Below are positions 23,640 through 54,521 of a DNA stretch of 64,000 nt, in pieces; within the stretch, counting starts at the first letter, position 1; the number at the start of each line of letters is the position of its first letter. Below the pieces are notes generated by a model, which did not search any database, was not told the DNA's origin, and worked only from the letters and a program-made list of their open reading frames with translations. The DNA lies in the IMG/VR virus record IMGVR_UViG_3300042261_001312, positions 186,001 to 250,000 of that record; one strand, written 5' to 3'. The position numbers and the translations under genes were made by a program.

Positions 23640-23649
23640 TACAAATACA

Positions 23650-26402: not shown

Positions 26403-27112
26403 TGAGAGATAGTTTAACAAATATCAAATTTATTGAACGTGCAAAATTAGTGCATGGTAATAAATACATATATAGTGCCTCGACATATACGGATGCTAGG
26501 CATAGTGTTGTGATATTGTGTCCCAAACATGGTCTTTTTACACAAAGACCTTTTGACCATTTAAATGGTTGTGGATGTAAAAAATGTGTTGGATTAAATC
26601 GCAAGACAAATGATGAATTTATTATTGAATCAAAAAAAATATTTGGTGATTTATTTTCTTATGATGATACAAATTATATAAATTCACAAACAAAGGTAAT
26701 TGTTAAATGTGTGCAACACGGAAATTTTCAAGTAACACCAAATAATCATTTATCTAAAAAACAGGGATGTCCCATATGTAAAGAATCAAAAGGTGAAAAG
26801 AAAATTGCTCAATTATTATATGACATGAAAGTTCAATTTATTAGAGAAAAAACTTTTGAGAATTGTGTTAGGAAAAAAAGAAAATTACCATTTGATTTTT
26901 ATTTACCCAATCATAATTTAGTTATTGAATATGATGGTAGACATCATTTCGAAATAATTGATGCTTTTGGTGGAAAAAATGGTTTTTCTGAAACACAAGA
27001 GAATGATAAGTTTAAAAATAATTTTTTACATGATAATAATATTAAATTATTGAGAATTCCATATAATCAATATGATAATATTGAAAAATTATTACAAAAT
27101 AATATATTTTAA
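26402..27112 (+). CDS. free-standing putative homing endonuclease (DUF723-like repeats plus Vsr/DUF559-like domain)
   Basis: Two Cys/His repeats plus ESKGE...FDFYLP...IEYDGRHH; TAATG overlaps at both ends. Confidence 0.8.
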   Translation: MRDSLTNIKFIERAKLVHGNKYIYSASTYTDARHSVVILCPKHGLFTQRPFDHLNGCGCKKCVGLNRKTNDEFIIESKKIFGDLFSYDDTNYINSQTKVIVKCVQHGNFQVTPNNHLSKKQGCPICKESKGEKKIAQLLYDMKVQFIREKTFENCVRKKRKLPFDFYLPNHNLVIEYDGRHHFEIIDAFGGKNGFSETQENDKFKNNFLHDNNIKLLRIPYNQYDNIEKLLQNNIF

Positions 27113-29694
27113 TGGAAGTAATCAAAAAAACTATATTACAAATAGTAACGACTGGAACTACAGGTGGCGATACTATTATTATTCCAGATTTGACCAAAGT
27201 CTATCATATGAAGATTGGGTTAATTGCTGAAGTAACTGATATTGGTTTTTTTGATGCATTTGGTGAATTTGTTCCAGTACCAACATCTACTACAACCACT
27301 ACAACAAGCACATCTACAACAACGACGTCTACAAGTACTTCCACTACAAGCACAACTAGTACGTCTACTAGTACATCCAGTACATCTACTACTTCAACAA
27401 GTACGTCTACAAGTACAACCAGTACTTCAACAACTAGTACAACAACTACGTTACCATATACTGGCTCATCAACAACGACAACAACTAGTACTTCAACCAC
27501 ATCAACATCAACAACTAGTACTTCAACCACATCAACATCAACAACAAGTACAAGTACGTCAACAACAAGTACCAGCACTTCAACGACTAGTACAACAACA
27601 TCATCACCCGATTGTTTATTTGGAAGTGGAACTGCTGAAGAATTAACAGCAGTGGTAATAAATGACCAAAGTTTTGATGTTTATGAAAATTCTCCAAATA
27701 GTACATTCATTGGTGATGTTATTTCGCCAGATGATCCTAATGTTACATATTCAATAATTGGTGGAAATACTGGCAATACGATGTCAATTGCTTCAAATAA
27801 TGGTGATTTAACTGTTGGCGATAATACGTTACTTGTATATGACACACACCCATTATTCTCATTGGATGTGAAAGTAACAAGCATTGCAGAACCATTATTA
27901 ACAGATACTGCAATAATAAGTGTTAACGTATTAAAAGTATGTACGGCAGCAACAACTTATGATTTAAGGTTTGTATCATCTTCAGGTGGTATTGGTGCAT
28001 TCAGTGTAGGAAAACTCACTGGAAATACATTAACAATTACTGATTATGTAATTGAATGGAGAAATGGTTCAAGAACAGGCGATGTAGTCTTTATTTCTGG
28101 TATGGGAACTGATGTCGCAATACAAGCACAACATCCATTTGTAAATGAACCAGTTGAGGGTGGTACATTATATCCAGTAATTAAATATGTAATAATTGGT
28201 GGTGTAACATATACTTCGATTAAAAATGTGCCAAATACATGCTATTCACCTGATCTTATAACATATATTAGTCCAATAGTGGTTCAAGCATATAATTGTA
28301 GCAACGGAACAACTGGCACATATTCACATATACTTACATATATTAATACATCAATGCCTGCAGACCAAGCCACACGTTCATTTAGATTTATTATTGGTAA
28401 TGATACGACAGAATTTGCGTTTATGTTTTATGGTTATAGTGTCGCTGACCGTATCACAATTAAACTTGTATCGAATGATGTAGAAACAACAATGGAAGAT
28501 TGGGTTGTTGGTGACGATAATATTGCCGATAATTTAACATCAATGCCTAGAATATATAAAAATCAATGGTATAGAGGTGTTATCGATTTAAAACAGCGCA
28601 CGTATGTTAGTGGTGATTATTTAAAAATTACGGTAGCACCAAGTTATAATGTACCATCACAAACAGATACTAACTGGCAATTGCAAATGAAATGTTTCAC
28701 AACTGCACTTCCTTTCAACTACGCACCCGCAAGTAATAGCGTTAATTATATTGATCCAAATTCATTTGTTGTAACTTGGAATAATGCAAATTGTGCATAC
28801 GATTTTGACTTTGTAACTGGTGCAGGACCTGCAAGCATATCAAGTACAAATGTTGGTACATATATGAGAGCATATTTTTATTGGTCAGTTAATTGGCAAT
28901 CAGCACAAAGAATATCAATACCGAGAAGCACATATGGCGGTTGGGGGTGGATTAAAGGCGGTTATACGTACACTACATTAAATGGGGTAATGACGATCAA
29001 GAAAGTCGGTTCAACATTAACATATAGTTTTACTAATGCAACTGACTACAATAATTATAAATCGGGATACAATACCACGATAGCAAATGCAAATTGGACG
29101 AATTATAGTACTGATACACAATCAGCCAATCATTATAAATTGTTTGAATTTGATCATAGGATTTCGATGACTGGTGGTGATACATATACTACAAAATACA
29201 TGTATTTTGGTCATGATTCAATATTTACTTTTGATGATATTAATTATAAAATAACGATTAATATGGCACAAATGCCTAATGAATATATTGACCAGACTTG
29301 TAGTAATGTATATGAAATAATAACGTCAGGACAAGGCACGGGAAGTCAATATGTATCAAATTTTATTGCAAGTGCTGATTTTGAAGTATCCACTATATTA
29401 GGAGAAGTTTCAAAATTTGATGCGAGATATTTATATACTGGTGTTTTGAATGCAACAACATACGATGTTGATTTACATCTAGAACTCCCATTCCCAGCAT
29501 TCTATGGAAACAATGCACCAAATTTATTACCGAATTGGTATCTTTATGGTAATGCATGGAAATTCCATAAATACTATTTAAGAATTGAAATAACAAATAA
29601 TTCAGACCCGATAAATAATTACAAAATTTACTCAAGACTAAATGCAAGTGGATATGACACTGGTGTATGGACGTTAATTAAATCAGTACCGTAA
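27112..29694 (+). CDS. virion-associated protein with mucin-like Thr/Ser stalk, cadherin-like domain and large distal domain
   Basis: ~108-aa T/S tract, then FDVYENSPNSTFIG...VTYSIIGGN...SIASNNGDLTV...FSLDVKVT...DTAIISVNV (cadherin pattern); located in the baseplate operon. Confidence 0.7.
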   Translation: MEVIKKTILQIVTTGTTGGDTIIIPDLTKVYHMKIGLIAEVTDIGFFDAFGEFVPVPTSTTTTTTSTSTTTTSTSTSTTSTTSTSTSTSSTSTTSTSTSTSTTSTSTTSTTTTLPYTGSSTTTTTSTSTTSTSTTSTSTTSTSTTSTSTSTTSTSTSTTSTTTSSPDCLFGSGTAEELTAVVINDQSFDVYENSPNSTFIGDVISPDDPNVTYSIIGGNTGNTMSIASNNGDLTVGDNTLLVYDTHPLFSLDVKVTSIAEPLLTDTAIISVNVLKVCTAATTYDLRFVSSSGGIGAFSVGKLTGNTLTITDYVIEWRNGSRTGDVVFISGMGTDVAIQAQHPFVNEPVEGGTLYPVIKYVIIGGVTYTSIKNVPNTCYSPDLITYISPIVVQAYNCSNGTTGTYSHILTYINTSMPADQATRSFRFIIGNDTTEFAFMFYGYSVADRITIKLVSNDVETTMEDWVVGDDNIADNLTSMPRIYKNQWYRGVIDLKQRTYVSGDYLKITVAPSYNVPSQTDTNWQLQMKCFTTALPFNYAPASNSVNYIDPNSFVVTWNNANCAYDFDFVTGAGPASISSTNVGTYMRAYFYWSVNWQSAQRISIPRSTYGGWGWIKGGYTYTTLNGVMTIKKVGSTLTYSFTNATDYNNYKSGYNTTIANANWTNYSTDTQSANHYKLFEFDHRISMTGGDTYTTKYMYFGHDSIFTFDDINYKITINMAQMPNEYIDQTCSNVYEIITSGQGTGSQYVSNFIASADFEVSTILGEVSKFDARYLYTGVLNATTYDVDLHLELPFPAFYGNNAPNLLPNWYLYGNAWKFHKYYLRIEITNNSDPINNYKIYSRLNASGYDTGVWTLIKSVP
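27283..27606 (+). repeat. Thr/Ser low-complexity coding tract 1
   Basis: About 108 codons, almost all ACN/TCN/AGY, interrupted once by LPYTG. Confidence 0.95.
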
Positions 29695-31163
29695 TGTTAA
29701 TAAAATTAAAATATAGTGGTCTAGGTGGCGATACAGGTCCTAATTTTTCGGTAACTCCCGATGTGGGTGTATCTGTTCCCGCAACTGTAACTAAAACAGA
29801 GTTACTTAATGGGGTTCTTGTGACTGTGGATGACTTAACTAATTCTATTACAATCACTTCCGAGGGTACATGTACTAATTCAAATGTTTTGAGTGTTATT
29901 CGTATAACAACCACAACCACGACAACAACTAGTACATCAACTACTTCAACGTCAACAACCAGTACATCTACGACAAGTACGTCAACCAGTACGTCTACAT
30001 CGACTAGTACCAGTACTTCAACAACTAGCACAAGTACATCTACATCGACTAGTACTTCAACAACTAGCACAAGTACTTCAACAACTAGCACAAGTACATC
30101 TACATCAACAAGTACCAGTACATCAACAACAAGTACTTCAACAACTAGCACAAGTACTTCTACAAGTACCAGTACGTCAACAAGTACTACTTCTACAACA
30201 AGTACTACAACAGCAGCACCACAAGATTATTATAGGTTGTATATGTGTCCGTCAAGTTCATATTATCAATCAGGACCGTACTCTCAAGGGACATATTCAA
30301 TAAATGATAGTTTTTATCTTGCGATAGGTGTTGATTTGTTTGCAACTTTTGTTATTGATGGTATTTCAAACTCAAGTTATGGATATACTAATATTCCAAG
30401 TTTAGGTACTCCAACTGGAACAGGATGCCCGGGTACAAGCACATCTACAACTACGTCAACCAGCACAAGTACTTCAACATCATCAACGAGCACAAGTACA
30501 TCTACATCGACTAGTACTTCAACAACTAGCACAAGTACTTCAACAAGTACAAGTACTTCAACAACTAGCACAAGTACTTCAACAAGTACAAGTACTTCAA
30601 CAACTAGCACAAGTACTTCAACAAGTACAAGTACTTCAACAACTAGCACAAGTACTTCAACTACTACTGCAAGTCCATCGCAAGTATATTTTTCATCAAA
30701 TGCATTAGCAATTAATAACAGTCAAGGTCAAACTTTCTCAATAACATTTGGTTATGATATTACTGCTTATTGTGATAATAATGGAACTAGTGGAGAAGAC
30801 CCAGTTCAAGCCACTACAACAATATCAGTTTCAACTAATGGTGGTGGTAGTTGGACTCAGATTGATAGTGTAACTGCTTCAGTATCTGGTGGTAATTATC
30901 CAGTCGAACAAAATGATACACAAAACGTAACTAATACTTATACAATTTATGGTATTACTGATGTTACACAAATACTCGTGACAGGTAGTTTCGATTGTTC
31001 TATTGGACTTAATACTCAGAATGGCTATATGACGGTTACAATAGATTCGGTAATGCCAGACTTTGGTATGACATCGATAATTTGTAATAATCAATATCTT
31101 GATGGATGTGGTGGTAGTAGTAATAATTGTACAATAGTTTCAACAACCACATCTTTTATGTAA
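29694..31163 (+). CDS. virion-associated protein with two mucin-like Thr/Ser tracts separating small beta-rich domains
   Basis: TAATG coupling; tracts at 29907-30212 and 30435-30668; Cys-containing beta-rich segments lie between them. Confidence 0.7.
   Translation: MLIKLKYSGLGGDTGPNFSVTPDVGVSVPATVTKTELLNGVLVTVDDLTNSITITSEGTCTNSNVLSVIRITTTTTTTTSTSTTSTSTTSTSTTSTSTSTSTSTSTSTSTTSTSTSTSTSTSTTSTSTSTTSTSTSTSTSTSTSTTSTSTTSTSTSTSTSTSTSTTSTTSTTTAAPQDYYRLYMCPSSSYYQSGPYSQGTYSINDSFYLAIGVDLFATFVIDGISNSSYGYTNIPSLGTPTGTGCPGTSTSTTTSTSTSTSTSSTSTSTSTSTSTSTTSTSTSTSTSTSTTSTSTSTSTSTSTTSTSTSTSTSTSTTSTSTSTTTASPSQVYFSSNALAINNSQGQTFSITFGYDITAYCDNNGTSGEDPVQATTTISVSTNGGGSWTQIDSVTASVSGGNYPVEQNDTQNVTNTYTIYGITDVTQILVTGSFDCSIGLNTQNGYMTVTIDSVMPDFGMTSIICNNQYLDGCGGSSNNCTIVSTTTSFM
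29907..30212 (+). repeat. Thr/Ser low-complexity coding tract 2
   Basis: 102 consecutive Thr/Ser codons. Confidence 0.95.
30435..30668 (+). repeat. Thr/Ser coding tract 3, containing three exact 39-bp tandem copies
   Basis: ACAAGTACTTCAACAAGTACAAGTACTTCAACAACTAGC at 30531, 30570 and 30609, plus a partial copy. Confidence 0.95.
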
Positions 31164-31184
31164 TATTTAATTTAAATTTGAAAA

Positions 31185-31631
31185 ATGGTAATAACGGGGA
31201 CATCAAGTAGCAGATTAAGTGAATTGCGTAAATACACTGTAACAAATGTATTTACGAAACAATATATCACTGGTGGCACTGTCAATATTGACGGTGTAGA
31301 CCTTTCTGTTTCTAATCCAGCAGATAAAATAGTTTATTATCTTGGTGGTATTAAATATATTGATATTATGTCGGGGGAAACTTCTGGGACAACATTGAAT
31401 ATTTATACACCACAAGGAACTGCTAGTGCAAATTTTATTAATGTACCATATTATAAAAATCCAAACAAAGAAAACATTATCAGCAACCCAAAAATTAATG
31501 ATGATGTATTTATATCAAGACAGGAATTATCCGCATTTGATAAAAATTACAGATTAGAATATATAAAAAATTTAAGTGATTTGGAAACATATGCAGGTGG
31601 TAATTATTTTAAAATAGTAAATAACTCATAA
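31185..31631 (+). CDS. putative structural protein
   Basis: 148-aa ORF (SSSRLSELRKY) in the baseplate operon. Confidence 0.65.
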   Translation: MVITGTSSSRLSELRKYTVTNVFTKQYITGGTVNIDGVDLSVSNPADKIVYYLGGIKYIDIMSGETSGTTLNIYTPQGTASANFINVPYYKNPNKENIISNPKINDDVFISRQELSAFDKNYRLEYIKNLSDLETYAGGNYFKIVNNS

Positions 31632-31632
31632 C

Positions 31633-32532
31633 ATGGCAATTGGAACAATAGGAATAACCAGACCTTCAGATGTTAATATCAGTGATATTGACATGTATTA
31701 CGATTATACCCCAAATAGACAAACACCTGCTGGTACAATTACCAAGGTCGATAATACCGCAGATTTTTTAGCACCCGTGCAATATGATGAAGGAATTGTA
31801 GGTTATACTGAAAATCTTTTGGAAGGTTTATATGATTTGAAATTACCTGCATCAATATTTAGTCAATTGGGAATATATACAATTTACTTAAAGCCTAAAT
31901 TAGTTCCCACAGTAATTGCTGATTGCAGTGTATTATCAGCATTGCCAACAATTAAAGGAATTGTTATCGACATGAATTCAATTCCAGAAGATTTAAGAGC
32001 CAATAACGCATTGCAGGGATATAGAATTGAATATGTTAATTCTGACGGGACTAAATTAAGAAATGTTGTTAGATACGTTGTTACATCAAATAAAGTATCT
32101 GCGATTAATGAAAATATTGGAAATACAACGCAAAAAGCAATTAGATATCGTTTTGATGATGCAGGTACATTAATTTTCTTACAAGTAACACCAAGTAGTT
32201 CTTCTGATGTAAAGGCAAATGCATTGCCATTTATTGGTAATATTGGACAAACAATATTAATGTCAAACACGTATTTTTCACCCGTAGTTGTTGAGGTTGA
32301 AATGGTTGAAAATACCATTGATACATTAACCAATTATGTTGCAGGTGAACAGATTAAGGATGTTCAAAATGGTATTTTAACATATTATGATGAAAATAGA
32401 GTAATTACAAGACAATTTAATTTATTTGAAATTAAAGATGATATAAGTAATGTTCCATTGTATGAAGTTAAGGAAAGAAGAACAAATATTGACGTTACAG
32501 AAAACTTTGATGATGTTACTGCTGGAATTTAA
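31633..32532 (+). CDS. putative baseplate/tail structural protein
   Basis: 299-aa beta-rich ORF; last gene before a strong terminator. Confidence 0.65.
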   Translation: MAIGTIGITRPSDVNISDIDMYYDYTPNRQTPAGTITKVDNTADFLAPVQYDEGIVGYTENLLEGLYDLKLPASIFSQLGIYTIYLKPKLVPTVIADCSVLSALPTIKGIVIDMNSIPEDLRANNALQGYRIEYVNSDGTKLRNVVRYVVTSNKVSAINENIGNTTQKAIRYRFDDAGTLIFLQVTPSSSSDVKANALPFIGNIGQTILMSNTYFSPVVVEVEMVENTIDTLTNYVAGEQIKDVQNGILTYYDENRVITRQFNLFEIKDDISNVPLYEVKERRTNIDVTENFDDVTAGI

Positions 32533-32553
32533 TTATTAATAACTCAAAATTAG

Positions 32554-32590
32554 GAAAAATCCCAATGCAACCCATTGGGATTTTTCTTTT
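32554..32590 (+). terminator. Rho-independent terminator
   Basis: 14-bp stem GAAAAATCCCAATG / CATTGGGATTTTTC, T-rich tail. Confidence 0.9.
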
Positions 32591-32594
32591 TATC

Positions 32595-32603
32595 GTATTT
32601 ATA
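32595..32603 (+). promoter_or_regulatory. GTATTTATA putative late promoter
   Basis: 25 nt before GTG 32620. Confidence 0.75.
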
Positions 32604-32619
32604 GTAAAATGTAAAGTTT

Positions 32620-36996: not shown

Positions 36997-37021
36997 TAAT
37001 AAAATTTTAAAATGATTTAAT

Positions 37022-37552
37022 ATGCCAACTTGGACAGAAGCAAAACCTATAAACGTTGGAGCAATTCCTGCCGATAATTATAATTATACAATTACTGGAA
37101 TGTCTGCTTCCACCATATATGAATATCGTGCATATATGGTGGTCGATGGTGTGCCTTATTATGGCAATACACGATCAACAATAACATTACCAATTCCAAC
37201 AGCACCACCAGCATTAGTAACTGGAGTTGCATATGATATAAACTATAATTCTATGGGTATTTGTAATAATTATTTAACGGATAAAGGTAATTTATGTGTT
37301 TGTGAATATGGTGTACTGTACACACAGTCAAATAGTTATGTCACAGAAGCCAACATGATTTATGAAAACGCAAATATTTGTAAACAATCTATCTGCTCTG
37401 ATATTGCAATTAGCGTTAATTATTTTACTGGTGCTGGAAATTTATTAACTGGTTTGTCACCCAATACTCAAACATTTTACAGGGCATTTGCAAAGAATAG
37501 TGCTGGTACTGGATATGGGACAATTCTTTCTCAATTAACACCTTTACCATAA
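37022..37552 (+). CDS. FN3-like repeat virion accessory protein
   Basis: TGMSASTIYEYRAYM and TGLSPNTQTFYRAFAKNSAGTGYG are FN3 terminal-strand patterns. Confidence 0.7.
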   Translation: MPTWTEAKPINVGAIPADNYNYTITGMSASTIYEYRAYMVVDGVPYYGNTRSTITLPIPTAPPALVTGVAYDINYNSMGICNNYLTDKGNLCVCEYGVLYTQSNSYVTEANMIYENANICKQSICSDIAISVNYFTGAGNLLTGLSPNTQTFYRAFAKNSAGTGYGTILSQLTPLP

Positions 37553-37568
37553 AAAAAGAATAAGTTGA

Positions 37569-37576
37569 GTATTTAT
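37569..37576 (+). promoter_or_regulatory. GTATTTAT putative late promoter
   Basis: 25 nt before GTG 37594. Confidence 0.7.
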
Positions 37577-37593
37577 GTTTAAATTGTTGAAAA

Positions 37594-40167
37594 GTGGCAT
37601 TTATCGATAAAAGAGACCCAGTTGTTTTAAATGTGATGTTAACATCAAAGGGTAGAGAATTACTATCCACTGGTGATTTAACATTTAAGTATTTTGCTAT
37701 TGGTGATAGCGAAATTGATTATGGATTAACAAATGAAATCAATGCTGTTGAAAGTCATTTAAATTATAAACCATATCCATTTGATTTTAGTATAGCAAGA
37801 CCTGTTGATAAAAATCCCAAAATAATTTCATTCATACCCAGAAGTGTGTCTGCTACTACAACTGGTACATTATCTGGTGATCCATATAATTTAATAACTG
37901 CTGTACCAACAGTTCCATTTGAAATCGTTAATAAATCATCATCAATTGGTTTTTTCACGAATACTGGCACAACATTTATTACTGACACCAATCATGTTAA
38001 ACAACCTGATGTGATGATCGATGCATCTACAATAGTGGGTGGTAGAGACTTAGCATTAAGAAAATCACCAACATATGGAACAAATTTTAATGAACCATCA
38101 GTGGGTGATTTATTGTTGATAAAATGGAATATCTATACAAACACAACTGGAAATACAATAAATAAATATTCTCCATCACCATACTTATTTTATCAGATTG
38201 TGGCTAAAACAGGTATGTTAAGTAGCGATAATTTAACTATTACGGTTGATAGAAATTTACCGAATTTCTACGGATTTAATCCAACTGCAAATATAGGTGC
38301 AATTGTTTATTATAATTACATTAATTATAGCGGCGCAACAGTATTTTTAGACACACCTGCAGATTATATATCTAAAAGTGAATTATCTTTTATAAACAAT
38401 TCCGAATGTCCAACTATCATTTTCCCGTATTGGAATATGACAATCATTTATACTGAGGAAATTAGTGGTGTTCAGACTGGAGATAGAAAATACACGCAAT
38501 TTAACAACAAGTCTTTCGGTGGTTTTGTTTCGTACATTCAAAATCAAGCACCAATCAATAAAAAATTGGGTATAATTCATTATACGAATAATTCACCAGC
38601 AAATGTTTATGGCGAAGAATTCTATTTGAAAACTCCCAAGTTGGAAATTCCAACAATAATGTGGCACAAATCTACTGGTGCAACAATGGGTTTAACTTTA
38701 GTTCCGACAGGTGATAGTAAATTATTAACTGGTGAGACCAAATCGTTAAATACCACATATTATGATCTTGCAGATTTGAGTGGAAATATTGTTGGAAAAG
38801 TATTAACTGATTTAAAGATGTTTTTGATTGAAGATCAAGAATTATTGTTTGCTATGTCCTATAAATCAAATAGGTCATGGACTCTTCCTGATTTTCTTGT
38901 TGATAATGTTGGTGCTCCAGTAATTGCACCGCCAACTCCTGAACCACCAATACCAAATACGTCAACAACAACAAGTACGACAAGTACTACATCGACTAGT
39001 ACGACTACAACAAGTACGACAAGTACGTCTACATCAACAACCACAGTGCAACCAAATGCGAAAATATTCATTAATAATGATACCACTTCTGGTGTAATTG
39101 TAACTGGAGTAACGGTTAATAATATTGCAACAACTAACGTATATCCTGTATATCCTGCACATACTGCATTGGCTATATCATATAAATTGGGTACTTGTAT
39201 TATTAAAGTAGGAATTGTTGTTGTAGTAAGCGGTGGAACTATTGATTTCACTGACTCAAACAACATATTGACATCTAAATTAATTACGACTAGTGGTGTT
39301 TACCAGTTTACGGGAATGACATTAACTAATGGTACTACTTTGAATATGTCGTTATACACTGGTGTTGTACCTACTACCACATCAACAACTACGACTACAA
39401 GTACATCTACTACAACTACTAGTACATCTACAACTACGTCAACAAGTACTTCGACTACGTCAACAAGTACAACTAGTACAACTACTTTACCGCCTGCTCC
39501 TACGGTAGATACTCTCACATCAACAGGTTCAACATATACAACTGCAAATGTTAGAGGTGATGTTTTAAGTGCAGGAAGTTTAACTGTTATTGCAAGAGGT
39601 GTTGTTTACATTACTGCTACAGAATATGATAATGGCAACGGTATACCACCAGAAGCAGGAACAAGAGTATATGATGTTACAGGTGGAACTGGTACATTTA
39701 GTTTCTACGTATCAGGCTTAATGAGTGGTACTGAATATGTGTATAAGTCATTTGCAATCAATGAATTAAATAATATTGGATATTCAGATAATACTGAAAC
39801 ATTTACCACATTAGCAGCAACAACAACGACTACATTGCCAGTTGGAACTACAAATTTTAATGCGGGTGTTAGTAACGAAGTGACAGCACCATATACGATT
39901 ACGAGTGTTAAAGCAAATTCAGTAGAATTACTTACACATCCAGTGACGGCAGGTAATGGTGACGTTCATCCAATAATGCCTCAGACAAATGCAACAGTAG
40001 TTGTGAGTTTTACTGGCACATTAACTAGTCCATATACCCAGATAGTTTTGTGGAGAGATAGTGGCACTATAATAAGAAGTATAAATCCAACTGTATTGGC
40101 TGCTGGCTCATATACTTTCTATAATATAACGTATAATAATTTCTTGTGGATTACCTTAGTTCCTTAA
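37594..40167 (+). CDS. tail/baseplate protein, paralogue A: conserved N-terminal ~430 aa, two T/S tracts, FN3/Ig-like distal domains
   Basis: N-terminus nearly collinear with 40198 (LNVMLTSKGRELLSTG...GDSEIDY ... AMSYKSNRSWTLPD); FN3-like SGLMSGTEYVYKSFAIN. Confidence 0.7.
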   Translation: MAFIDKRDPVVLNVMLTSKGRELLSTGDLTFKYFAIGDSEIDYGLTNEINAVESHLNYKPYPFDFSIARPVDKNPKIISFIPRSVSATTTGTLSGDPYNLITAVPTVPFEIVNKSSSIGFFTNTGTTFITDTNHVKQPDVMIDASTIVGGRDLALRKSPTYGTNFNEPSVGDLLLIKWNIYTNTTGNTINKYSPSPYLFYQIVAKTGMLSSDNLTITVDRNLPNFYGFNPTANIGAIVYYNYINYSGATVFLDTPADYISKSELSFINNSECPTIIFPYWNMTIIYTEEISGVQTGDRKYTQFNNKSFGGFVSYIQNQAPINKKLGIIHYTNNSPANVYGEEFYLKTPKLEIPTIMWHKSTGATMGLTLVPTGDSKLLTGETKSLNTTYYDLADLSGNIVGKVLTDLKMFLIEDQELLFAMSYKSNRSWTLPDFLVDNVGAPVIAPPTPEPPIPNTSTTTSTTSTTSTSTTTTSTTSTSTSTTTVQPNAKIFINNDTTSGVIVTGVTVNNIATTNVYPVYPAHTALAISYKLGTCIIKVGIVVVVSGGTIDFTDSNNILTSKLITTSGVYQFTGMTLTNGTTLNMSLYTGVVPTTTSTTTTTSTSTTTTSTSTTTSTSTSTTSTSTTSTTTLPPAPTVDTLTSTGSTYTTANVRGDVLSAGSLTVIARGVVYITATEYDNGNGIPPEAGTRVYDVTGGTGTFSFYVSGLMSGTEYVYKSFAINELNNIGYSDNTETFTTLAATTTTTLPVGTTNFNAGVSNEVTAPYTITSVKANSVELLTHPVTAGNGDVHPIMPQTNATVVVSFTGTLTSPYTQIVLWRDSGTIIRSINPTVLAAGSYTFYNITYNNFLWITLVP
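38959..39045 (+). repeat. Thr/Ser coding tract 4
   Basis: 29 consecutive Thr/Ser codons preceded by a Pro-rich segment. Confidence 0.9.
39373..39486 (+). repeat. Thr/Ser coding tract 5
   Basis: 38 consecutive Thr/Ser codons. Confidence 0.9.
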
Positions 40168-40171
40168 ATTA

Positions 40172-40179
40172 GTATTTAT
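40172..40179 (+). promoter_or_regulatory. GTATTTAT putative late promoter
   Basis: 26 nt before ATG 40198. Confidence 0.7.
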
Positions 40180-40197
40180 TTATAAATTTTCAAAAAA

Positions 40198-42027
40198 ATG
40201 GCATTTATTGATATAAAAGACCCGCTAGTTTTAAATGTAATGTTAACATCGAAAGGTAGAGAATTATTATCTACTGGAAATTTAACATTCAAATATTTCG
40301 CTGTGGGTGATAGTGAAATTGATTATGGTTTTATTAAGGAAGTAAATATCGATGATGCCGAATATTCTGCATATGATTCAACAATTTTACAACCAACGGA
40401 TAAAAATCCAAGGATAATTTCTTTTATACCAAGTTTGCCGTCTGGTGATACATATAACACAATATCAGGACTTACAGCCACATCATATAATGTTACACAT
40501 CAAGTAGAACCAATTGGATTTTTTTCAAGCGGAGCAACTCAATTTATTGTGGATGCAGACCATGTTAAACAACCTGATGCAATGGTTTATGTAAATGGTG
40601 TAACTGGCGGTACTACATTGAGATTGAGAAAAGCACCAACATATGGAACAAGCGGTCAAGAACCAGCAATTGGTGATTTAGTTTTGGTTAAATGGGTGCA
40701 TTATGGACATACAACAGGGTATACTGTAAATAAAAATGTGCCAAGTCCATATTTAACCTATCAAATTATAGGCAAAAGCGGTATGTTGGCAAATGATGAC
40801 CTTACAGTCATTGTGGATAGAAGTCTACCAAATTTTAAAGGATTTAATTATTATAATGGTATTGCTGGTGCAATGATTTATTACAACTTCTCTAACTATA
40901 CTGGAAGCACAATATATAATGATTTAGAAACTGATTATATTAGTGAAAGCGTGTTGTCATTCACTCAAAATAATCAATGCCCAATTCCAGCATTTCCTTT
41001 TTGGAATATGTCAATTGTATATACCAGTGAAATTGCTGGTGTTATGTCTTTTCATAGAAAATATACTCAGTTTGATAGTAGAACGTATGGTGGTTTTGTT
41101 ACATATATACAAAATCAAATGCCAGTGTATGATAAATTAGGTATTATACACTATAGTAATGAATCACCAGCAAACACATATGGTGATGCGTTTAATTTAA
41201 AAACAGCCAGATTGGAAATTCCAACAATAATGTGGCATAAATCTATCACAAGAACATTGGGTGTTACATTAGTACCAACTGGTAGTACTAAGACCTTGGC
41301 AGGACTTGAAACTCAATATTATGATCTTGCAGATTTAAATGGAAATATTGTTGGAAAAGTGTTTATTGATTTGAAAATGTTTTTGATTGAAGATCAGGAA
41401 TTATTGTCAGCAATGTCATATAAATCAAATAGATCATGGACACTTCCAGATTATTATGTTGATGAAAAAATACCTACAACAACCACAACTAGTACAAGTA
41501 CTTCTACAACAACCACAACTAGTACAAGTACTACAAGTACAACCACAACTAGTACAAGTACAACTAGTACGAGCACAACTAGTACGAGCACAACAAGTAC
41601 CTCAACATCAACAACTAGTACAAGTACAACTAGTACAAGTACAACTAGTACGAGCACAACAAGTACTTCAACTACTAGTACGAGCACAACAAGTACTTCA
41701 ACTACTACAACTACATGTGCATTAACATTTAATGCTCCTTCATCTGAAGATGGTAACTTGATAGTTACAAATTCTTCTTCAAGTTTATATCATAACATAT
41801 TTGATTACATCAATATTATATTCACACCAGAGAATGCAATGCAATCATCAGGATATGATGTTTGGTATCAAGTATTCAGAATTAGAAGTGGAATAGGTTC
41901 AATCGTTTTGCAAGATAAGATTACAAATTGTGAAAATGGTGTACAAGCAAATGTATCTCCACAAATTCCTAATACGATTTGCGATGATGAATATTTTGTT
42001 TATTTATACTTAATTGAGCCAGTTTAA
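40198..42027 (+). CDS. tail/baseplate protein, paralogue B: conserved N-terminal domain, 80-aa T/S tract, short distal domain
   Basis: Shares the N-terminal domain with 37594; the two diverge completely after SWTLPD. Confidence 0.7.
   Translation: MAFIDIKDPLVLNVMLTSKGRELLSTGNLTFKYFAVGDSEIDYGFIKEVNIDDAEYSAYDSTILQPTDKNPRIISFIPSLPSGDTYNTISGLTATSYNVTHQVEPIGFFSSGATQFIVDADHVKQPDAMVYVNGVTGGTTLRLRKAPTYGTSGQEPAIGDLVLVKWVHYGHTTGYTVNKNVPSPYLTYQIIGKSGMLANDDLTVIVDRSLPNFKGFNYYNGIAGAMIYYNFSNYTGSTIYNDLETDYISESVLSFTQNNQCPIPAFPFWNMSIVYTSEIAGVMSFHRKYTQFDSRTYGGFVTYIQNQMPVYDKLGIIHYSNESPANTYGDAFNLKTARLEIPTIMWHKSITRTLGVTLVPTGSTKTLAGLETQYYDLADLNGNIVGKVFIDLKMFLIEDQELLSAMSYKSNRSWTLPDYYVDEKIPTTTTTSTSTSTTTTTSTSTTSTTTTSTSTTSTSTTSTSTTSTSTSTTSTSTTSTSTTSTSTTSTSTTSTSTTSTSTTTTTCALTFNAPSSEDGNLIVTNSSSSLYHNIFDYINIIFTPENAMQSSGYDVWYQVFRIRSGIGSIVLQDKITNCENGVQANVSPQIPNTICDDEYFVYLYLIEPV
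41476..41715 (+). repeat. Thr/Ser coding tract 6
   Basis: 80 consecutive Thr/Ser codons, built largely of TTSTS units. Confidence 0.95.
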
Positions 42028-42111
42028 AATGGGGATATTTGTAGATATATCTTGAATACACAAAATTTTTACAAAAAATCAATAAAACATGAATCAATTT
42101 TGAAATTATAA

Positions 42112-42120
42112 GTATTTATA
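42112..42120 (+). promoter_or_regulatory. GTATTTATA putative late promoter of the glycosylation operon
   Basis: 37 nt before ATG 42149. Confidence 0.7.
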
Positions 42121-42148
42121 ATAAATAATAAAAAATTATAAATAACTT

Positions 42149-43171
42149 ATGAAGCAATTAAGATTTGTTAGCGCACAACCTGCAACGAAATATTATGCAT
42201 GGCAGGTAGAAGTGATGATAAATAATTTTATCGAGATGGGTATTAATGCAAATCACATTGATGTAATTGCATGGAAAGAAAATGGCATAATACCTGAAGA
42301 ATGGAGTAAACTTGCCAATAGATACGCAGCAAGATTCTTTTTTTATGATGACACGAGAGATACCAAATATTATGTGTCATCAATCCGACCAAACATATTA
42401 AAACAACATTTTAAAGCACATTCATATTTAAAATATGATGTGATATTTTATCATGATTGCGACATTATATTCACAAAAAATCCAAGAGAATGGATTACCG
42501 ATGAAATGCTAAGTGACGACATTTGGTATGGTTCTGACACTCGCTGGTACATTTCACACTCATACATTAAAAGCAAAGGCGATGATGTGATGAAAAAAAT
42601 GTGTGACATCATGCAGATTGATGAACAAATTGTTGAAGAAAATGAATTAAACTGTATTGGTGCTCAATATCTTATGAAAAATATCGATTATTCGTTTTGG
42701 GATATGGTTGAGAAAGACAGCGAGAAACTGTTTAAGGATGTCACGAATTTAAACACACAAAAGATCATGCTGGATAAAATGAGATTCGAAGAAGAAAAAA
42801 AAGAATGGGAAAAAAATAATCCAGAAGCACTTGCCAAAGGTGAAAAATATTCAAGACCTCTTTATCACGAACTCCAAATTTGGTGTGCAGATATGTGGGC
42901 AGTTCTTTGGGGTGCATGGAGATTAGGATATAAAACAAATTGCCATCCAAATTACGAATTTAGTTGGGCGACATCAAATGAAGAAGAATATCAAAGAATG
43001 AATATCATGCATAATGCTGGGGTTGCATCAGCAAATGAGGGATTGTTTTATAAGGCATCGTATATGAATGAATATCCCTACAATAAAAATTTAACAATAA
43101 GAGAAGGCACTTCCAGTAAAAAATACTACGAGTGGGTTCAAAAAACAGAAAAAATAACAGCATTACAATAA
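42149..43171 (+). CDS. GT-A glycosyltransferase resembling plant peptidyl-serine alpha-galactosyltransferase / hydroxyproline O-arabinosyltransferase (GT96/GT95)
   Basis: Ordered motifs YYAWQ, YVSSIRP, FYHDCDII (DxD), IGAQYLMK, IWCADMWAVLWGAWRLG parallel the remembered SERGT1/HPAT pattern YxxWQ, YxxxNKP, ILDADMI, GG..xM, WxxEMYxYxFGAA.xG. Confidence 0.65.
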   Translation: MKQLRFVSAQPATKYYAWQVEVMINNFIEMGINANHIDVIAWKENGIIPEEWSKLANRYAARFFFYDDTRDTKYYVSSIRPNILKQHFKAHSYLKYDVIFYHDCDIIFTKNPREWITDEMLSDDIWYGSDTRWYISHSYIKSKGDDVMKKMCDIMQIDEQIVEENELNCIGAQYLMKNIDYSFWDMVEKDSEKLFKDVTNLNTQKIMLDKMRFEEEKKEWEKNNPEALAKGEKYSRPLYHELQIWCADMWAVLWGAWRLGYKTNCHPNYEFSWATSNEEEYQRMNIMHNAGVASANEGLFYKASYMNEYPYNKNLTIREGTSSKKYYEWVQKTEKITALQ

Positions 43172-43824
43172 TGGAAAAAATAATACATCAAATATGGGTC
43201 GGTCCTTATGAAATTCCAGAAAGGGAACAATATTTTATCGAAACAGTAAAAAAATATAATCCGACATTTCAACATATGCTATGGAAAGATGATAATTTGC
43301 CAGAATTACCTGAAAAAATTCAAATATTATGTGATGCATTTAAAAAACAAAAAGATTATGCACATATTGCAGATGTCTTGAGAATTTTTTTGGTTAAACA
43401 ATATGGTGGTTTGTATATTGATGTTGATTTTAAGCCGATCAAACCTTTTGATTTGTTTGACAATAATAATAATTCATTATTTGTCTGTTATCATGGTGGT
43501 AATGACTATACAATGCCAAACGGAGTTTTTGGTGGTAAAAAAGATTCGGAACAAGTTAATTTCATTTATGACTTGGTTGATATTAAACTTGGTGGATGGT
43601 ACGGACCGAGTTGGCTCGGTGGCGCAGTCAAAAAATATTTAAATTTAGACTACGAAACTGATCATGAAGTGGTGAAAGAAAAATGTGTTGAGAATAATAT
43701 CGAATATTGCTTATTTCCATTATTTGAACAATATTTTCAACATTTAGCATTATATTCATGGTCGCCAGAAAATAAGAGAAATTTTGAAACAGGTAATATT
43801 AATTATTTAGAATGGACGAAATAG
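43171..43824 (+). CDS. GT32-family (OCH1/A4GALT-like, DxD) glycosyltransferase
   Basis: KIIHQIWVG, AHIADVLRI, YGGLYIDVDF, GP.WL. Start set to ATG 43171 (TAATG overlap). Confidence 0.88.
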   Translation: MEKIIHQIWVGPYEIPEREQYFIETVKKYNPTFQHMLWKDDNLPELPEKIQILCDAFKKQKDYAHIADVLRIFLVKQYGGLYIDVDFKPIKPFDLFDNNNNSLFVCYHGGNDYTMPNGVFGGKKDSEQVNFIYDLVDIKLGGWYGPSWLGGAVKKYLNLDYETDHEVVKEKCVENNIEYCLFPLFEQYFQHLALYSWSPENKRNFETGNINYLEWTK

Positions 43825-44438
43825 AAAAAATATTTTCAGGAGATAATCATCTATATGGTAGAACAGATATAGATACTTTTAGTGTAAGTGGCTGTGGGTC
43901 ACAAATGGATAACTCAACATTAAATGTCAGGGAAAATTTATATAATTTCTTAATTAAATATAATATTAAAAGCATTTTCGATGCACCATGTGGCGATTAT
44001 TGGTGGATGAGACATGTTGATTTAAAGGAAATTGAATATATTGGCGGTGATATAATTACCGAACAAATGAAGAAATTGAATAAGAATTTCCCTGATAAAA
44101 AATTCATAAGATTTGATGTTATTAAAGACAAATTCCCAGATGTTGATTTATTGTTTTGTCGTGATTGTCTATTTCATTTTAGCAAAAAGGATAAAATAAT
44201 GACATTTGAAAATTTTATTAATTCAAACATAAAATATTTGTTAATGAGTAATCATCCATTGAGTACAAATAATTTAGACATTTCCACTGGTGATTTTACA
44301 CACATTAACTGGCAATTATCTCCGTGGAATTTCGGTGAACCAGTTGACATCTTATATGATAGTAATAGTGGATATGATACCAAAGAATTACAATTATATA
44401 CTAAAGAACAAATTTTAAAATATTTAAAAAATGGGTAA
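43812..44438 (+). CDS. class I SAM-dependent methyltransferase (possible glycan O-methyltransferase)
   Basis: SGCGS N-terminal motif, motif I SIFDAPCGD, YIGGDII, FDVI, DLLFCRDCLFHF. Confidence 0.8.
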   Translation: MDEIEKIFSGDNHLYGRTDIDTFSVSGCGSQMDNSTLNVRENLYNFLIKYNIKSIFDAPCGDYWWMRHVDLKEIEYIGGDIITEQMKKLNKNFPDKKFIRFDVIKDKFPDVDLLFCRDCLFHFSKKDKIMTFENFINSNIKYLLMSNHPLSTNNLDISTGDFTHINWQLSPWNFGEPVDILYDSNSGYDTKELQLYTKEQILKYLKNG

Positions 44439-45225
44439 GAAAGTAAGTTTTGTCTGTACGACATATGGAAGATTTTATTGTGTTAGGCGCATTGTTGCAC
44501 AATATCATGCACAAACATATCAAAATAAAGAATTAATTATTTTCAATCAAGATATGGAACATCCTTTTGAATTAGGTTTTGAAGATGATTCAATCATTGT
44601 CATCAATAATGATACAAATTACATAACAGGAATGTTATATACAAATAGAGGTGATATTTGTAGAGATGCTGTAACACATGCAACTGGTGATTATTTCATG
44701 TTGGCTGATGATGATGATATTTATTTACCTTGGCATTTACAACAGGCTGTTGAAGGTATTGAGGAAATGGGTACAGATGCATGGAAACCTGAAAAAAGTT
44801 TATTCGCTGTTGCTGATAGAGTTGAACTTTGCCAAAATACTATGGAAGCAAGTGTCATTATTAAAATGGATAGAATCAGAGAAATTGGATTTAGAAATGA
44901 TTTAACTGGTTACGAGGGATTGAGTTGGTATACCAAATTAAGAGACGAAAAACAGTTATTGGAAAATAATAAAAATTATATTCCGTCATATTGTTTTAAT
45001 TGGAGTGATCCTTCTGAAATTGCTGGGCATAAACAAAGTGGTGACATTGACAACCCAAATAATTTTGAAAATCATAGAAGAGCCAGTTGTGATTATGCAA
45101 CAGAACCATTAACGCCAATTACCGCAGATGAATTGGTAAGCGTATATGAAAAGTATTTTAATTGGTTGAGAAATAACCAAGATAAAATTAATAAAGATTA
45201 CTATGTGAGGTATTTTGATAATTAA
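44431..45225 (+). CDS. GT2-family glycosyltransferase
   Basis: VSFVCTTYGR...QTYQNKELIIFN...ATGDYFMLADDDDIYLPWHL. Confidence 0.88.
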   Translation: MGKKVSFVCTTYGRFYCVRRIVAQYHAQTYQNKELIIFNQDMEHPFELGFEDDSIIVINNDTNYITGMLYTNRGDICRDAVTHATGDYFMLADDDDIYLPWHLQQAVEGIEEMGTDAWKPEKSLFAVADRVELCQNTMEASVIIKMDRIREIGFRNDLTGYEGLSWYTKLRDEKQLLENNKNYIPSYCFNWSDPSEIAGHKQSGDIDNPNNFENHRRASCDYATEPLTPITADELVSVYEKYFNWLRNNQDKINKDYYVRYFDN

Positions 45226-54499: not shown

Positions 54500-54521
54500 A
54501 TTGTAAGTGATTTATGTTAGT

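What the first reader, a model, noticed from the sequence alone, without database searches (positions are those of the whole stretch)
27112..45225. Candidate phage mucin-type O-glycosylation system: Thr/Ser-tract virion proteins plus a dedicated GT/GT/MTase/GT operon
Seen: four baseplate/tail genes carry six near-pure Thr/Ser tracts (about 108, 102, 78, 29, 38 and 80 residues). Immediately after the last one sits a separately promoted, translationally coupled four-gene operon: a GT-A enzyme resembling peptide-O-glycosyltransferases (42149), a GT32 (43171), a SAM methyltransferase (43812) and a GT2 (44431). Structural genes then resume. The operon shares the GTATTTAT promoter motif with the structural genes. 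Established: GT32 includes enzymes that extend O-glycans; some mycobacteriophages glycosylate their virions with their own GTs; the Bacteroidota host O-glycosylation system acts in the periplasm and so could not reach virions assembled in the cytoplasm. Inference: the pathway is initiation on Ser/Thr, elongation by GT32/GT2, then methyl capping, giving rigid glycosylated 'bottle-brush' stalks on the virion like eukaryotic mucins or fungal adhesins. I know of no description of such a substrate-plus-enzyme module in phages.
Basis: partly seen in the sequence, partly recalled or inferred. Interest (0 to 1): 0.92.

Follow-up and report, generated by a model that had tools for sequence, protein, structure and literature searches.

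The report
Phage poly-Thr/Ser virion glycosylation module
A jumbo phage carries long pure threonine/serine stalks in its tail-fibre-like proteins next to a sugar-adding enzyme cassette, and the lead enzyme belongs to a large unnamed phage family that turns up almost only beside such stalks, which points to a widespread, undescribed way for phages to sugar-coat their particles.

Summary
Six near-pure Thr/Ser tracts (29-108 aa) lie in four genes at 27112-42027. They are followed by four overlapping genes: a GT-A-fold enzyme, a GT32, a SAM methyltransferase and a GT2.

Two details fail. The genes after the operon are recombination/repair genes, not structural ones. The first enzyme resembles retaining GT8/GT24 enzymes, not mucin-type GalNAc-transferases.

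The first enzyme (PHROG 4417, no Pfam, "hypothetical" everywhere) tracks Thr/Ser tracts closely:
- In 61 unrelated viral contigs, tract density peaks just upstream of it (44/56 loci, against 3/48 downstream).
- In the window's own clade, 3/3 tract-bearing relatives have it and 23/24 tract-less relatives lack it.
- In Enterococcus-type phages, 12/12 major tail proteins with a poly-Thr tail are followed by the gene, against 0/15 without the tail.

The accessory enzymes vary between phages and are sometimes fused to the lead enzyme.

The closest known systems are mycobacteriophage virion glycosylation (unrelated enzymes, no tracts) and bacterial serine-rich-repeat adhesin islands. I rate it a new variant of a known kind, of high interest, and testable in cultured phages of lactic acid bacteria.

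The parts
27112..29694 (+). Fibre-like protein T1 (860 aa): 53-aa N-terminal anchor, Thr/Ser tract of about 108 aa (nt 27271-27618), then a 690-aa distal part with a cadherin-like domain
   Evidence: Tract. Cadherin PF00028 at 4.6e-6, just below its cut-off. Only the first ~50 aa are conserved in relatives.
29694..31163 (+). Protein T2 (489 aa, 53% Ser+Thr): two tracts (nt 29892-30224 and 30420-30686) separating three small domains
   Evidence: Its C-terminal domain recurs on other fibres in relatives (L094, L134).
37594..40167 (+). Protein T3 (857 aa): conserved ~440-aa N-terminal domain, tracts at nt 38947-39057 and 39358-39498, distal domains
   Evidence: Its N-domain is a paralogue of T4's, and relatives carry one copy.
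40198..42027 (+). Protein T4 (609 aa): conserved ~420-aa N-terminal domain, 80-aa tract (nt 41464-41730), 98-aa distal domain
   Evidence: Tract-less relatives keep only the N-domain, or join it to a distal domain through a Pro/Thr/Ala linker (L094).
42112..42119 (+). GTATTTAT motif 37 nt before the first enzyme gene; a candidate promoter or leader element shared with many genes of the window
   Evidence: 27 matches against 9.7 expected. Distances to gene starts. Its function is inferred.
42149..43171 (+). Lead enzyme: soluble GT-A-fold glycosyltransferase (340 aa, PHROG 4417) with invariant D103-x-D105 and H288; the proposed Thr/Ser-tract O-glycosyltransferase
   Evidence: Association with tracts.
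43171..43824 (+). GT32-type glycosyltransferase (217 aa, DVD at residues 84-86); start at the ATG that overlaps the upstream stop (TAATG)
   Evidence: Pfam PF04488 at 1.6e-15. PDB: DXD region as in Och1/YeGT. The start is supported by the L093 orthologue.
43812..44438 (+). Class I SAM-dependent methyltransferase (208 aa); substrate unknown, proposed to be a sugar
   Evidence: PHROG 3382 at 4e-33. Pfam MT_11 at 18.5 bits, below its cut-off. PDB best hit 2e-3. Found only in the window and L093 among relatives.
44431..45225 (+). GT2-type glycosyltransferase (264 aa, DDDD at residues 93-96)
   Evidence: Pfam PF00535 at 2.8e-6. SpsA and S. parasanguinis GalT1 are the best PDB sequence hits. The same family follows the lead enzyme in 9 loci and is fused to it in P0277 and P0322.

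Best explanation
This is a phage-encoded cytoplasmic protein O-glycosylation module.

The lead enzyme (42149-43171) is a soluble GT-A-fold glycosyltransferase with a GT8/GT24-like fold, so it is probably retaining. I propose that it transfers a sugar from a nucleotide sugar onto the hydroxyls of the near-pure Thr/Ser tracts of the fibre-like proteins encoded just upstream.

The three genes coupled to it (GT32-type, SAM methyltransferase, GT2-type) then extend and methylate the glycan. The result would be extended, hydrophilic, protease-resistant stalks that hold distal, probably receptor-binding, domains away from the particle.

Shown:
- the tracts;
- the enzyme folds and families;
- the gene overlap;
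- the tight, repeated co-occurrence of the lead-enzyme family with Thr/Ser tracts in virion proteins of very different phages.

Inferred:
- that the tracts are the acceptor;
- the order of enzyme steps;
- the sugar;
- that the window's tract proteins are in the virion;
- the physical consequence.
For: 1. Fold. The AlphaFold model has pLDDT 96.9. The best PDB matches are WbbM, the UGGT catalytic domain, LgtC, glycogenin and XXYLT1, at E 1e-7 to 1e-4. D103, D105 and H288 are invariant across 55 sequences down to 24% identity. None of the four enzymes has a membrane segment.

2. Position. In 61 non-redundant IMG/VR loci, same-strand tract density is 41, 33, 23 and 12 aa per kb in the four kb upstream of the gene. 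It is zero in the three kb downstream. 44/56 loci have a tract within 5 kb upstream, against 3/48 downstream.

3. The window's own clade. Among 27 non-redundant relatives sharing the 1458-aa neighbour, tracts and the enzyme gene are both present in 3 and both absent in 23. There is one divergent exception (Fisher p = 0.0014). At least 3 concordant changes are needed on the tree. Tract-less relatives keep the fibre N-domain and go straight on to the 45261 homologue.

4. Enterococcus phiFL1A-type major tail proteins. 12 have a poly-Thr tail and the gene 3-13 bp downstream; 15 have neither; none is discordant. This takes 4 concordant changes.

5. All nine isolate phages checked have Thr-rich ends or tracts on capsid, tail-tube or Ig-like proteins beside the gene.

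6. Accessory genes. L093 has all four genes. Other loci carry other GT2/GT32-type genes. The lead enzyme is fused to the window's GT2 family and to a GT32-like family in other genomes.

7. Selection acts on the amino acids. 98% of tract codons encode Ser or Thr across ten different codons.

8. The host route is unlikely. The tracts contain no D-(S/T)-(A/I/L/V/M/T) sequon, and the proteins have no signal-like N-terminus. That the Bacteroidota system is periplasmic is established knowledge, not tested here.
Against: - There is no biochemical or mass-spectrometric evidence for any member of this family.
- The window's tract proteins match no virion family. A model of their shared N-domain was poor (pLDDT 58) and found no fold match.
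- In a sample of viral contigs with a poly-Thr run of 12 or more, only 8 of 57 informative cases have the enzyme nearby. Tracts therefore do not need an adjacent copy.
- 7 of 56 enzyme loci show no tract within 6 kb. A divergent subfamily (L169, L161) lacks tracts.
- The numbers of independent evolutionary pairs are small: 2-3 and 3-4. Neither sign test is significant on its own.
- The methyltransferase's substrate is unknown, and it is rare among relatives.
Confidence: 0.65

Rival explanations
1. The enzyme cassette modifies something other than the tracts: host surface polysaccharide, LPS or teichoic acid, or phage DNA. It merely travels with variable fibre genes as part of an exchangeable adsorption or host-range module.
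For: GT2 and GT32-type enzymes commonly build polysaccharides (weak NCBIfam hits to PglI, WcaA and TuaG). Accessory genes cluster at the ends of tail modules. The cassette composition varies a lot. The window holds another glycosyltransferase elsewhere (19400-20782).
Against: This does not explain why a 20-30-residue poly-Thr tail on otherwise 65-100% identical major tail proteins appears and disappears exactly with the gene. It also does not explain why capsid proteins in the same phages carry the same tail. All four enzymes lack membrane segments.
Confidence: 0.15
2. The tracts are unmodified flexible linkers. The GT-A-like protein is a non-catalytic chaperone or assembly factor that recognises them.
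For: Ser/Thr/Pro-rich linkers between domains are common. A tract-less relative uses a Pro/Thr/Ala linker in the same place (L094). Many poly-Thr tracts in viral contigs have no such gene nearby.
Against: The DxD aspartates and a histidine are invariant across the family down to 24% identity, as expected of an active metal-dependent enzyme. The gene is followed by, or fused to, further glycosyltransferases. The extreme purity of the tracts is not needed for a linker.
Confidence: 0.07
3. Host enzymes start the glycosylation of the tracts, and the phage enzymes only remodel or extend host-made glycans.
For: Bacteroidota and Bacillota hosts have protein O-glycosylation systems (established knowledge; streptococcal Ser/Thr-rich regions, PMC12041528).
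Against: The host sequon is absent from the tracts, and there is no export signal. The same phage enzyme family is linked to tracts in hosts from three phyla with unrelated glycosylation systems.
Confidence: 0.06

Closest known systems
Mycobacteriophage virion glycosylation (Che8 gp108-110, Corndog, Myrna; Freeman et al. 2023, as described in PMC12363180 and PMC12619734)
   Same: Phage-encoded cytoplasmic glycosyltransferases decorate the phage's own capsid and tail-tube subunits at their C-termini. The Che8 cassette also combines GT2 domains with a methyltransferase domain: gp108 is GT2 plus a TylF-like MTase, gp109 is GT2, gp110 is GT25.
   Different: There is no sequence relation to the lead enzyme (hhalign probability 0.06%). 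Che8 capsid and tail-tube proteins end in ...TGS and ...DGS with no Thr/Ser tract. Its enzyme genes lie at the far end of the genome from the substrates. Here the acceptor is a long low-complexity tract, often internal, and the genes are adjacent.
Serine-rich-repeat adhesin glycosylation islands of Gram-positive bacteria (GtfA/GtfB plus accessory glycosyltransferases; PMC7661464, PMC7948813)
   Same: Long Ser-rich repeats are O-glycosylated step by step in the cytoplasm. A conserved core enzyme sits with a variable set of accessory glycosyltransferases beside the substrate gene. The glycosylated repeat forms a stalk that projects a binding domain and resists proteolysis. The window's GT2 has weak similarity to S. 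parasanguinis GalT1.
   Different: The core enzyme there is a GT-B pair, not a GT-A. That system is cellular, coupled to an accessory Sec export system, with Ser-dominated dipeptide repeats. Here it is viral, with no export, and the tracts are Thr-dominated.
GT8/GT24 retaining GT-A glycosyltransferases (LgtC, glycogenin, UGGT catalytic domain, XXYLT1)
   Same: Best structural matches to the lead enzyme. The DxD follows a central strand, and there is a C-terminal conserved His. Several members act on proteins or protein-linked glycans.
   Different: No Pfam or PDB sequence match at all. TM-scores are only 0.45-0.6. The lead enzyme has a long helical insertion (residues 181-223). The acceptor is different.
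Chlorovirus and giant-virus capsid or fibril glycosylation by virus-encoded enzymes (PBCV-1 A111/114R, PMC7826918; the A064R methyltransferase domain is from my own knowledge)
   Same: Virus-encoded cytoplasmic glycosyltransferases, together with a sugar methyltransferase, build capsid glycans. GT8-like giant-virus proteins are among the BFVD structural matches.
   Different: These are eukaryotic viruses with N-linked atypical glycans on a folded capsid protein and no Thr/Ser tract acceptor.

Membership tests
GT-A fold glycosyltransferases (for 42149-43171) | Single Rossmann-like alpha/beta/alpha nucleotide-sugar-binding fold | tested here: met
   AlphaFold pLDDT 96.9. There are 144 PDB matches at E<=1e-3, and the top 50 listed are almost all GT-A enzymes.
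GT-A fold glycosyltransferases (for 42149-43171) | DxD metal/nucleotide-sugar motif after a central strand, plus a distal His ligand | tested here: inconclusive
   D103, D105 and H288 are invariant in 55 sequences. The DxD follows strand 98-101, and His288 lies in strand 286-288. The 3D geometry could not be measured because no coordinates were available.
CAZy GT8 (sequence family, Pfam Glyco_transf_8) | Significant match to the family profile | tested here: not met
   No Pfam family at E<=0.01. No PDB sequence hit with a profile of 43 sequences. The similarity is in fold only.
GT27 polypeptide GalNAc-transferases (mucin-type initiation) | GT27 catalytic domain with Gal/GalNAc-T motif, usually with a ricin-type lectin domain | tested here: not met
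   No Pfam match. No ppGalNAc-T appears among the top 50 structural matches. The protein is a single 340-aa domain.
Mycobacteriophage-type virion glycosylation system | Enzymes homologous to Che8 gp108-110 | tested here: not met
   The lead enzyme against gp110 gives hhalign probability 0.06%. No mycobacteriophage appears among the 77 tblastn hits. Only the generic GT2 class is shared.
Mycobacteriophage-type virion glycosylation system | Glycans demonstrated on capsid or tail-tube subunits | not testable with these tools
   This needs mass spectrometry or glycan staining of virions.
Serine-rich-repeat adhesin glycosylation islands | GtfA/GtfB core pair (GT-B) and accessory Sec genes beside the substrate | tested here: not met
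   No GT-B/Glycos_transf_1 or Sec-family match in any of the genes from 24552 to 49041.
GT32 (for 43171-43824) | Match to Gly_transf_sug (PF04488) above the curated cut-off, with a DXD | tested here: met
   58 bits against a cut-off of 23. DVD at residues 84-86.
GT2 (for 44431-45225) | Match to Glycos_transf_2 (PF00535) above the curated cut-off | tested here: met
   27.8 bits against 23.3, a narrow margin. SpsA is the best PDB hit at 6e-4.
Class I SAM methyltransferases (for 43812-44438) | Match to a methyltransferase profile and a glycine-rich SAM motif I | tested here: inconclusive
   PHROG 3382 'methyltransferase' at 4e-33. Pfam MT_11 scores 18.5 bits, below its 21.2 cut-off. A motif-I-like FDAPCGD is present.
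Host (Bacteroidota) general O-glycosylation substrates | D-(S/T)-(A/I/L/V/M/T) sequon on an exported protein | tested here: not met
   No sequon in any of the six tracts. The N-termini are hydrophilic.

The most novel reading that the evidence does not exclude
PHROG 4417 is a previously unrecognised, widespread family of phage protein O-glycosyltransferases, with about 1,000 clusters at 50% identity. Its portable acceptor signal would be simply a poly-Thr/Ser tract. Together with a variable set of accessory enzymes, it would give phages of Bacteroidota, Bacillota and Actinomycetota mucin-like glycan coats on tail fibres, tail tubes and capsids. This would be a second, mechanistically distinct and far more widespread virion glycosylation system than the mycobacteriophage one.
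Probability: 0.55. Interest if true: 0.85.

Novelty: new variant of a known kind. Interest (0 to 1): 0.78.

Why it matters
Phage virion glycosylation has so far been shown only in mycobacteriophages, where it alters antibody recognition.

If this family does glycosylate poly-Thr/Ser tracts, then many well-studied phages carry an unnoticed glycan coat. These include phages of Enterococcus, Lactococcus, Lactobacillus, Clostridium and Staphylococcus, as well as many uncultured aquatic and gut phages.

That would bear on several questions:
- immune recognition and clearance in phage therapy;
- adsorption and host range;
- virion stability;
- unexplained mass shifts and unresolved fuzzy density in structural work on tail tubes and capsids.

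It would also supply a simple enzyme-plus-tag pair for making defined O-glycoproteins in the bacterial cytoplasm.

The hypothesis can be tested directly in cultured, food-grade systems.

Tried and rejected
- DNA search of the operon against 50,697 phage records found no match.
- Sequence and profile searches of the lead enzyme against Pfam, NCBIfam and the PDB found nothing.
- Pfam and PHROG searches of the tract proteins found nothing usable, whether whole or cut into non-tract pieces. The exception is a sub-threshold cadherin-like domain.
- tblastn of the T4 N-domain and of the 1458-aa protein against isolate phages found no match.
- The AlphaFold model of the shared T3/T4 N-domain, built from 33 homologues, reached only pLDDT 58. 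Foldseek found nothing below E = 0.09. The virion role of the window's tract proteins therefore stays an inference.
- hhalign of the commonest unknown downstream partner families (C0, C3, C32, C18, C22, C15, C6) against the GT and MT families found no relation.
- PDB sequence searches of two fusion proteins (P0250, P0275) and of the second glycosyltransferase at 19400-20782 found nothing.
- Nine full-text literature searches found no description of this family or of poly-Thr tails on phage proteins. Freeman et al. 2023 itself is not held.
- Rejected: that the tracts are DNA slippage artefacts. Ten different Ser/Thr codons are used and only 2% of tract codons are other codons.
- Rejected: that the ORFs overlapping the tracts in other frames are genes. 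They are by-products of low complexity.

Full report
**What is in the window**

The window is part of IMG/VR contig UViG_3300042261_001312, a 327,676-bp jumbo phage. It has about 30% G+C, and almost all genes are on the + strand.

The best match among isolate phages for the key enzyme is a Chryseobacterium phage. That agrees with a Bacteroidota host. It also agrees with a recently described lineage of large aquatic phages in which several glycosyltransferases belong to the core genome (PMC12619734).

Gene order around the finding:
- Upstream: helicase, DNA polymerase, tRNA nucleotidyltransferase, a glycosyltransferase (19400-20782) and an HNH endonuclease.
- A baseplate-wedge gene (24552-26402, phrog_219) and a second HNH endonuclease.
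- The block 27112-42027.
- The four-gene cassette 42149-45225.
- Downstream: a conserved unknown gene (45261), a RuvC-like resolvase, SbcD, a third HNH endonuclease and SbcC.

The cassette therefore closes a fibre-like block that sits among replication and recombination genes. Structural genes do not resume after it.

**The observation**

Six near-pure Thr/Ser tracts lie in four ORFs at the stated places and with the stated lengths. They are the only such tracts in the 64 kb.

They are encoded by imperfect repeats with periods of 15-66 nt. Ten different Ser/Thr codons are used, from both serine codon classes, and only 10 of 441 codons encode anything else. The composition is thus held by selection on the protein, not by slippage of a single DNA unit.

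Each tract protein has the same layout: a conserved N-terminal part, one or two tracts, and small distal domains.

T3 and T4 share a paralogous N-domain of about 430 aa, which relatives have in single copy.

The four cassette genes overlap by 1, 13 and 8 nt. The motif GTATTTAT is about three times over-represented and lies 22-43 nt before many starts. One copy precedes the cassette and none lies inside it. This fits a single transcription unit, although promoter function is inferred.

**The enzymes**

- 43171-43824 is a GT32-type enzyme and 44431-45225 a GT2-type enzyme by Pfam.
- 43812-44438 is a methyltransferase by PHROG, with a sub-threshold Pfam match.
- 42149-43171 matches nothing by sequence except PHROG 4417, whose function is unknown.

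I modelled the 42149 protein with an alignment of 55 homologues spanning 24-80% identity. The model has pLDDT 96.9.

Foldseek places it among GT-A glycosyltransferases. The top matches are retaining enzymes of the GT8/GT24 type: WbbM, the UGGT catalytic domain, LgtC, glycogenin and XXYLT1.

In the viral structure library, its only close relatives are uncharacterised phage proteins, including Lactobacillus phage LP65 Orf49.

D103, D105 and H288 are invariant and lie where GT-A enzymes bind metal and nucleotide sugar.

None of the four enzymes has a membrane-like segment.

**Does the lead enzyme go with the tracts?**

I ran four tests.

(a) Position.
- 511 IMG/VR stretches encode a homologue. 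I fetched 80 and kept 61 after removing duplicates.
- Most share no other detectable gene with the window.
- Same-strand tract density rises to 41 residues per kb in the kilobase just upstream of the gene and is zero for 3 kb downstream.
- 44 of 56 loci have a tract within 5 kb upstream, against 3 of 48 downstream.
- Of the 12 exceptions, five have short poly-Thr runs or tracts on the other side, and seven have nothing within 6 kb.

(b) The window's own clade.
- I found relatives through the neighbouring 1458-aa protein and kept the 27 non-redundant loci with the whole interval present.
- Three have tracts and the enzyme. Twenty-three have neither.
- One has a divergent (37% identical) enzyme without tracts. 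None has tracts without the enzyme (Fisher p = 0.0014).
- On a tree of the neighbour protein, the joint state needs three changes.
- In tract-less relatives, the T3/T4 homologue is just the N-domain, followed at once by the 45261 homologue and RuvC. The long T1 and T2 genes are missing too.
- In L094, a Pro/Thr/Ala linker joins the N-domain to a T2-like distal domain.

(c) A distant lineage. Among Enterococcus phiFL1A-type major tail proteins, 12 end in a poly-Thr tail and have the enzyme gene 3-13 bp downstream. Fifteen have neither, and none is discordant. This takes four changes on the tree.

(d) Isolates. All nine isolate phages I inspected carry Thr-rich C-termini or tracts on capsid, tail-tube or Ig-like proteins beside the gene. 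They are:
- Chryseobacterium MA9V-3;
- Enterococcus phiFL1A and Planchet;
- Clostridium phiCTP1;
- Lactobacillus Semele and SAC12B;
- Lactococcus 1706;
- Lacticaseibacillus R3.3;
- Arcanobacterium TPWB06.

The reverse relation is weaker. I sampled viral contigs with a run of at least 12 Thr codons. Eight of 57 informative cases have the enzyme as the next gene, and 49 have none nearby. The 49 include giant viruses.

So the enzyme almost always has a tract beside it. Tracts exist without an adjacent copy. In those cases the enzyme may lie elsewhere in the genome, another enzyme may serve, or the tracts may be bare.

**The other three genes**

Their link to the tracts is indirect.
- They overlap the lead gene.
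- L093 carries all four in the same order. GT32, MT and GT2 there are 72-82% identical to the window's, while the lead enzyme is 58% identical.
- Other loci replace them with other GT2- and GT32-type genes, unknown families, or a radical SAM/SPASM enzyme.
- The family has 976 clusters at 50% identity, and 72 of the best 150 are fusions longer than 480 aa. The fused parts match the same families that elsewhere lie downstream as separate genes. These include the window's GT2 family and a GT32-like family.

A conserved core enzyme with a variable accessory set is the pattern of serine-rich-repeat adhesin islands (PMC7661464).

**Mechanism proposed**

In the cytoplasm, the lead enzyme adds a first sugar to tract hydroxyls. 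The linkage is probably alpha, given the retaining-type fold. GT32 and GT2 extend the glycan and the methyltransferase modifies a sugar. The densely glycosylated tract then stiffens into a stalk carrying the distal domain.

Only the parts list and the associations are shown. The acceptor, the order of steps, the sugar and the physical effect are inferred.

The host's own route is unlikely. The tracts lack the Bacteroidota sequon and the proteins lack export signals. The same phage family is tied to tracts in hosts of three phyla.

**Comparison with known systems**

Mycobacteriophage virion glycosylation is the only known phage case (PMC12363180, PMC12619734).
- Its Che8 cassette likewise mixes GT2 domains with a methyltransferase domain and a GT25.
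- It shares no homology with the lead enzyme.
- Its substrates have no tracts.
- Its enzyme genes are far from the substrate genes.

Serine-rich-repeat adhesins work in a very similar way but use a GT-B core and are cellular.

The lead enzyme fails the sequence tests for GT8 and for GT27 membership.

Nine literature searches found no description of this family or of poly-Thr tails on phage proteins. That is absence from the held library, not proof of novelty.

**Verdict**

- It is a new variant of a known kind (phage virion glycosylation). It rests on an uncharacterised and widespread enzyme family and can be tested in cultured phages.

Noticed in passing
window 23590-24552, 26402-27112 and 54507-56213: Three HNH/homing endonuclease genes (phrog_559/3339). 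Two of them directly flank the baseplate-wedge gene 24552-26402, with shared stop/start positions.
   Followed up: no
window, 24 + strand sites, e.g. 6519, 10081, 14158, 18070, 23217, 32595, 37569, 40172, 42112, 45239, 61858: GTATTTAT is about three times over-represented, strongly strand-biased, and usually lies 22-43 nt before a start codon. This holds for both structural-looking and replication genes. It is a candidate phage promoter or leader motif for a Bacteroidota-type host.
   Followed up: partly
window 19400-20782: A further glycosyltransferase-like gene (460 aa, phrog_7162 at 1e-30 over residues 324-447) lies among the replication genes. It has no PDB sequence match, and its relation to the cassette is unknown.
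   Followed up: partly
window 37594-38900 and 40198-41463: T3 and T4 share a paralogous N-terminal domain of about 430 aa (62% identity). Most relatives carry a single copy, so the window has a tandem duplication with different tracts and distal domains.
   Followed up: partly
L318:5720-5926 (Arcanobacterium phage TPWB06) and L315:5778-5873 (Enterococcus phage Planchet): A long poly-Thr stretch is encoded in another frame overlapping the 3' end of the major tail protein gene (TPWB06). In Planchet, one lies just past the stop of the major capsid gene. Both sit directly before the enzyme gene. A programmed frameshift or readthrough may give a Thr-rich extension to a fraction of subunits.
   Followed up: no
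L003:10960-13352; also L022, L045, L064, L068, L076; protein P0255: In several loci the lead enzyme is followed by a radical SAM/SPASM enzyme, usually with a 340-470-aa unknown protein, instead of further glycosyltransferases. In P0255 it is fused to one. This hints at a different chemistry on the same tracts.
   Followed up: partly
L169:13770-14687 and L161:11534-12451: A divergent subfamily of the lead enzyme (33-37% identity) sits between the 1458-aa protein and the fibre gene in relatives that have no Thr/Ser tracts. Its acceptor is unknown.
   Followed up: partly
L006-L008 (81% identical relatives), tract at L007:3777 (241 aa) against L008:3906 (198 aa): Tract length differs by tens of residues between near-identical relatives. 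A tract is present in their homologue of the 37022 gene but absent from the window's copy, so tracts are gained, lost and resized quickly.
   Followed up: no
window 27204-27578 (-), 27242-27646 (+), 29678-30151 (-), 38859-39266 (-), 41387-41725 (+): Open reading frames in other frames or on the other strand over the tracts are by-products of the low-complexity repeats and should not be annotated as genes.
   Followed up: yes
L059:2665-3534 (cluster C0, 28 loci) and L027:10939-11460 (cluster C3, 13 loci): The commonest genes after the lead enzyme in other phages are a 289-aa and a 173-aa protein. They have no Pfam match and no hhalign relation to the glycosyltransferase or methyltransferase families. 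C0 also occurs fused to the lead enzyme (P0250, P0337).
   Followed up: partly
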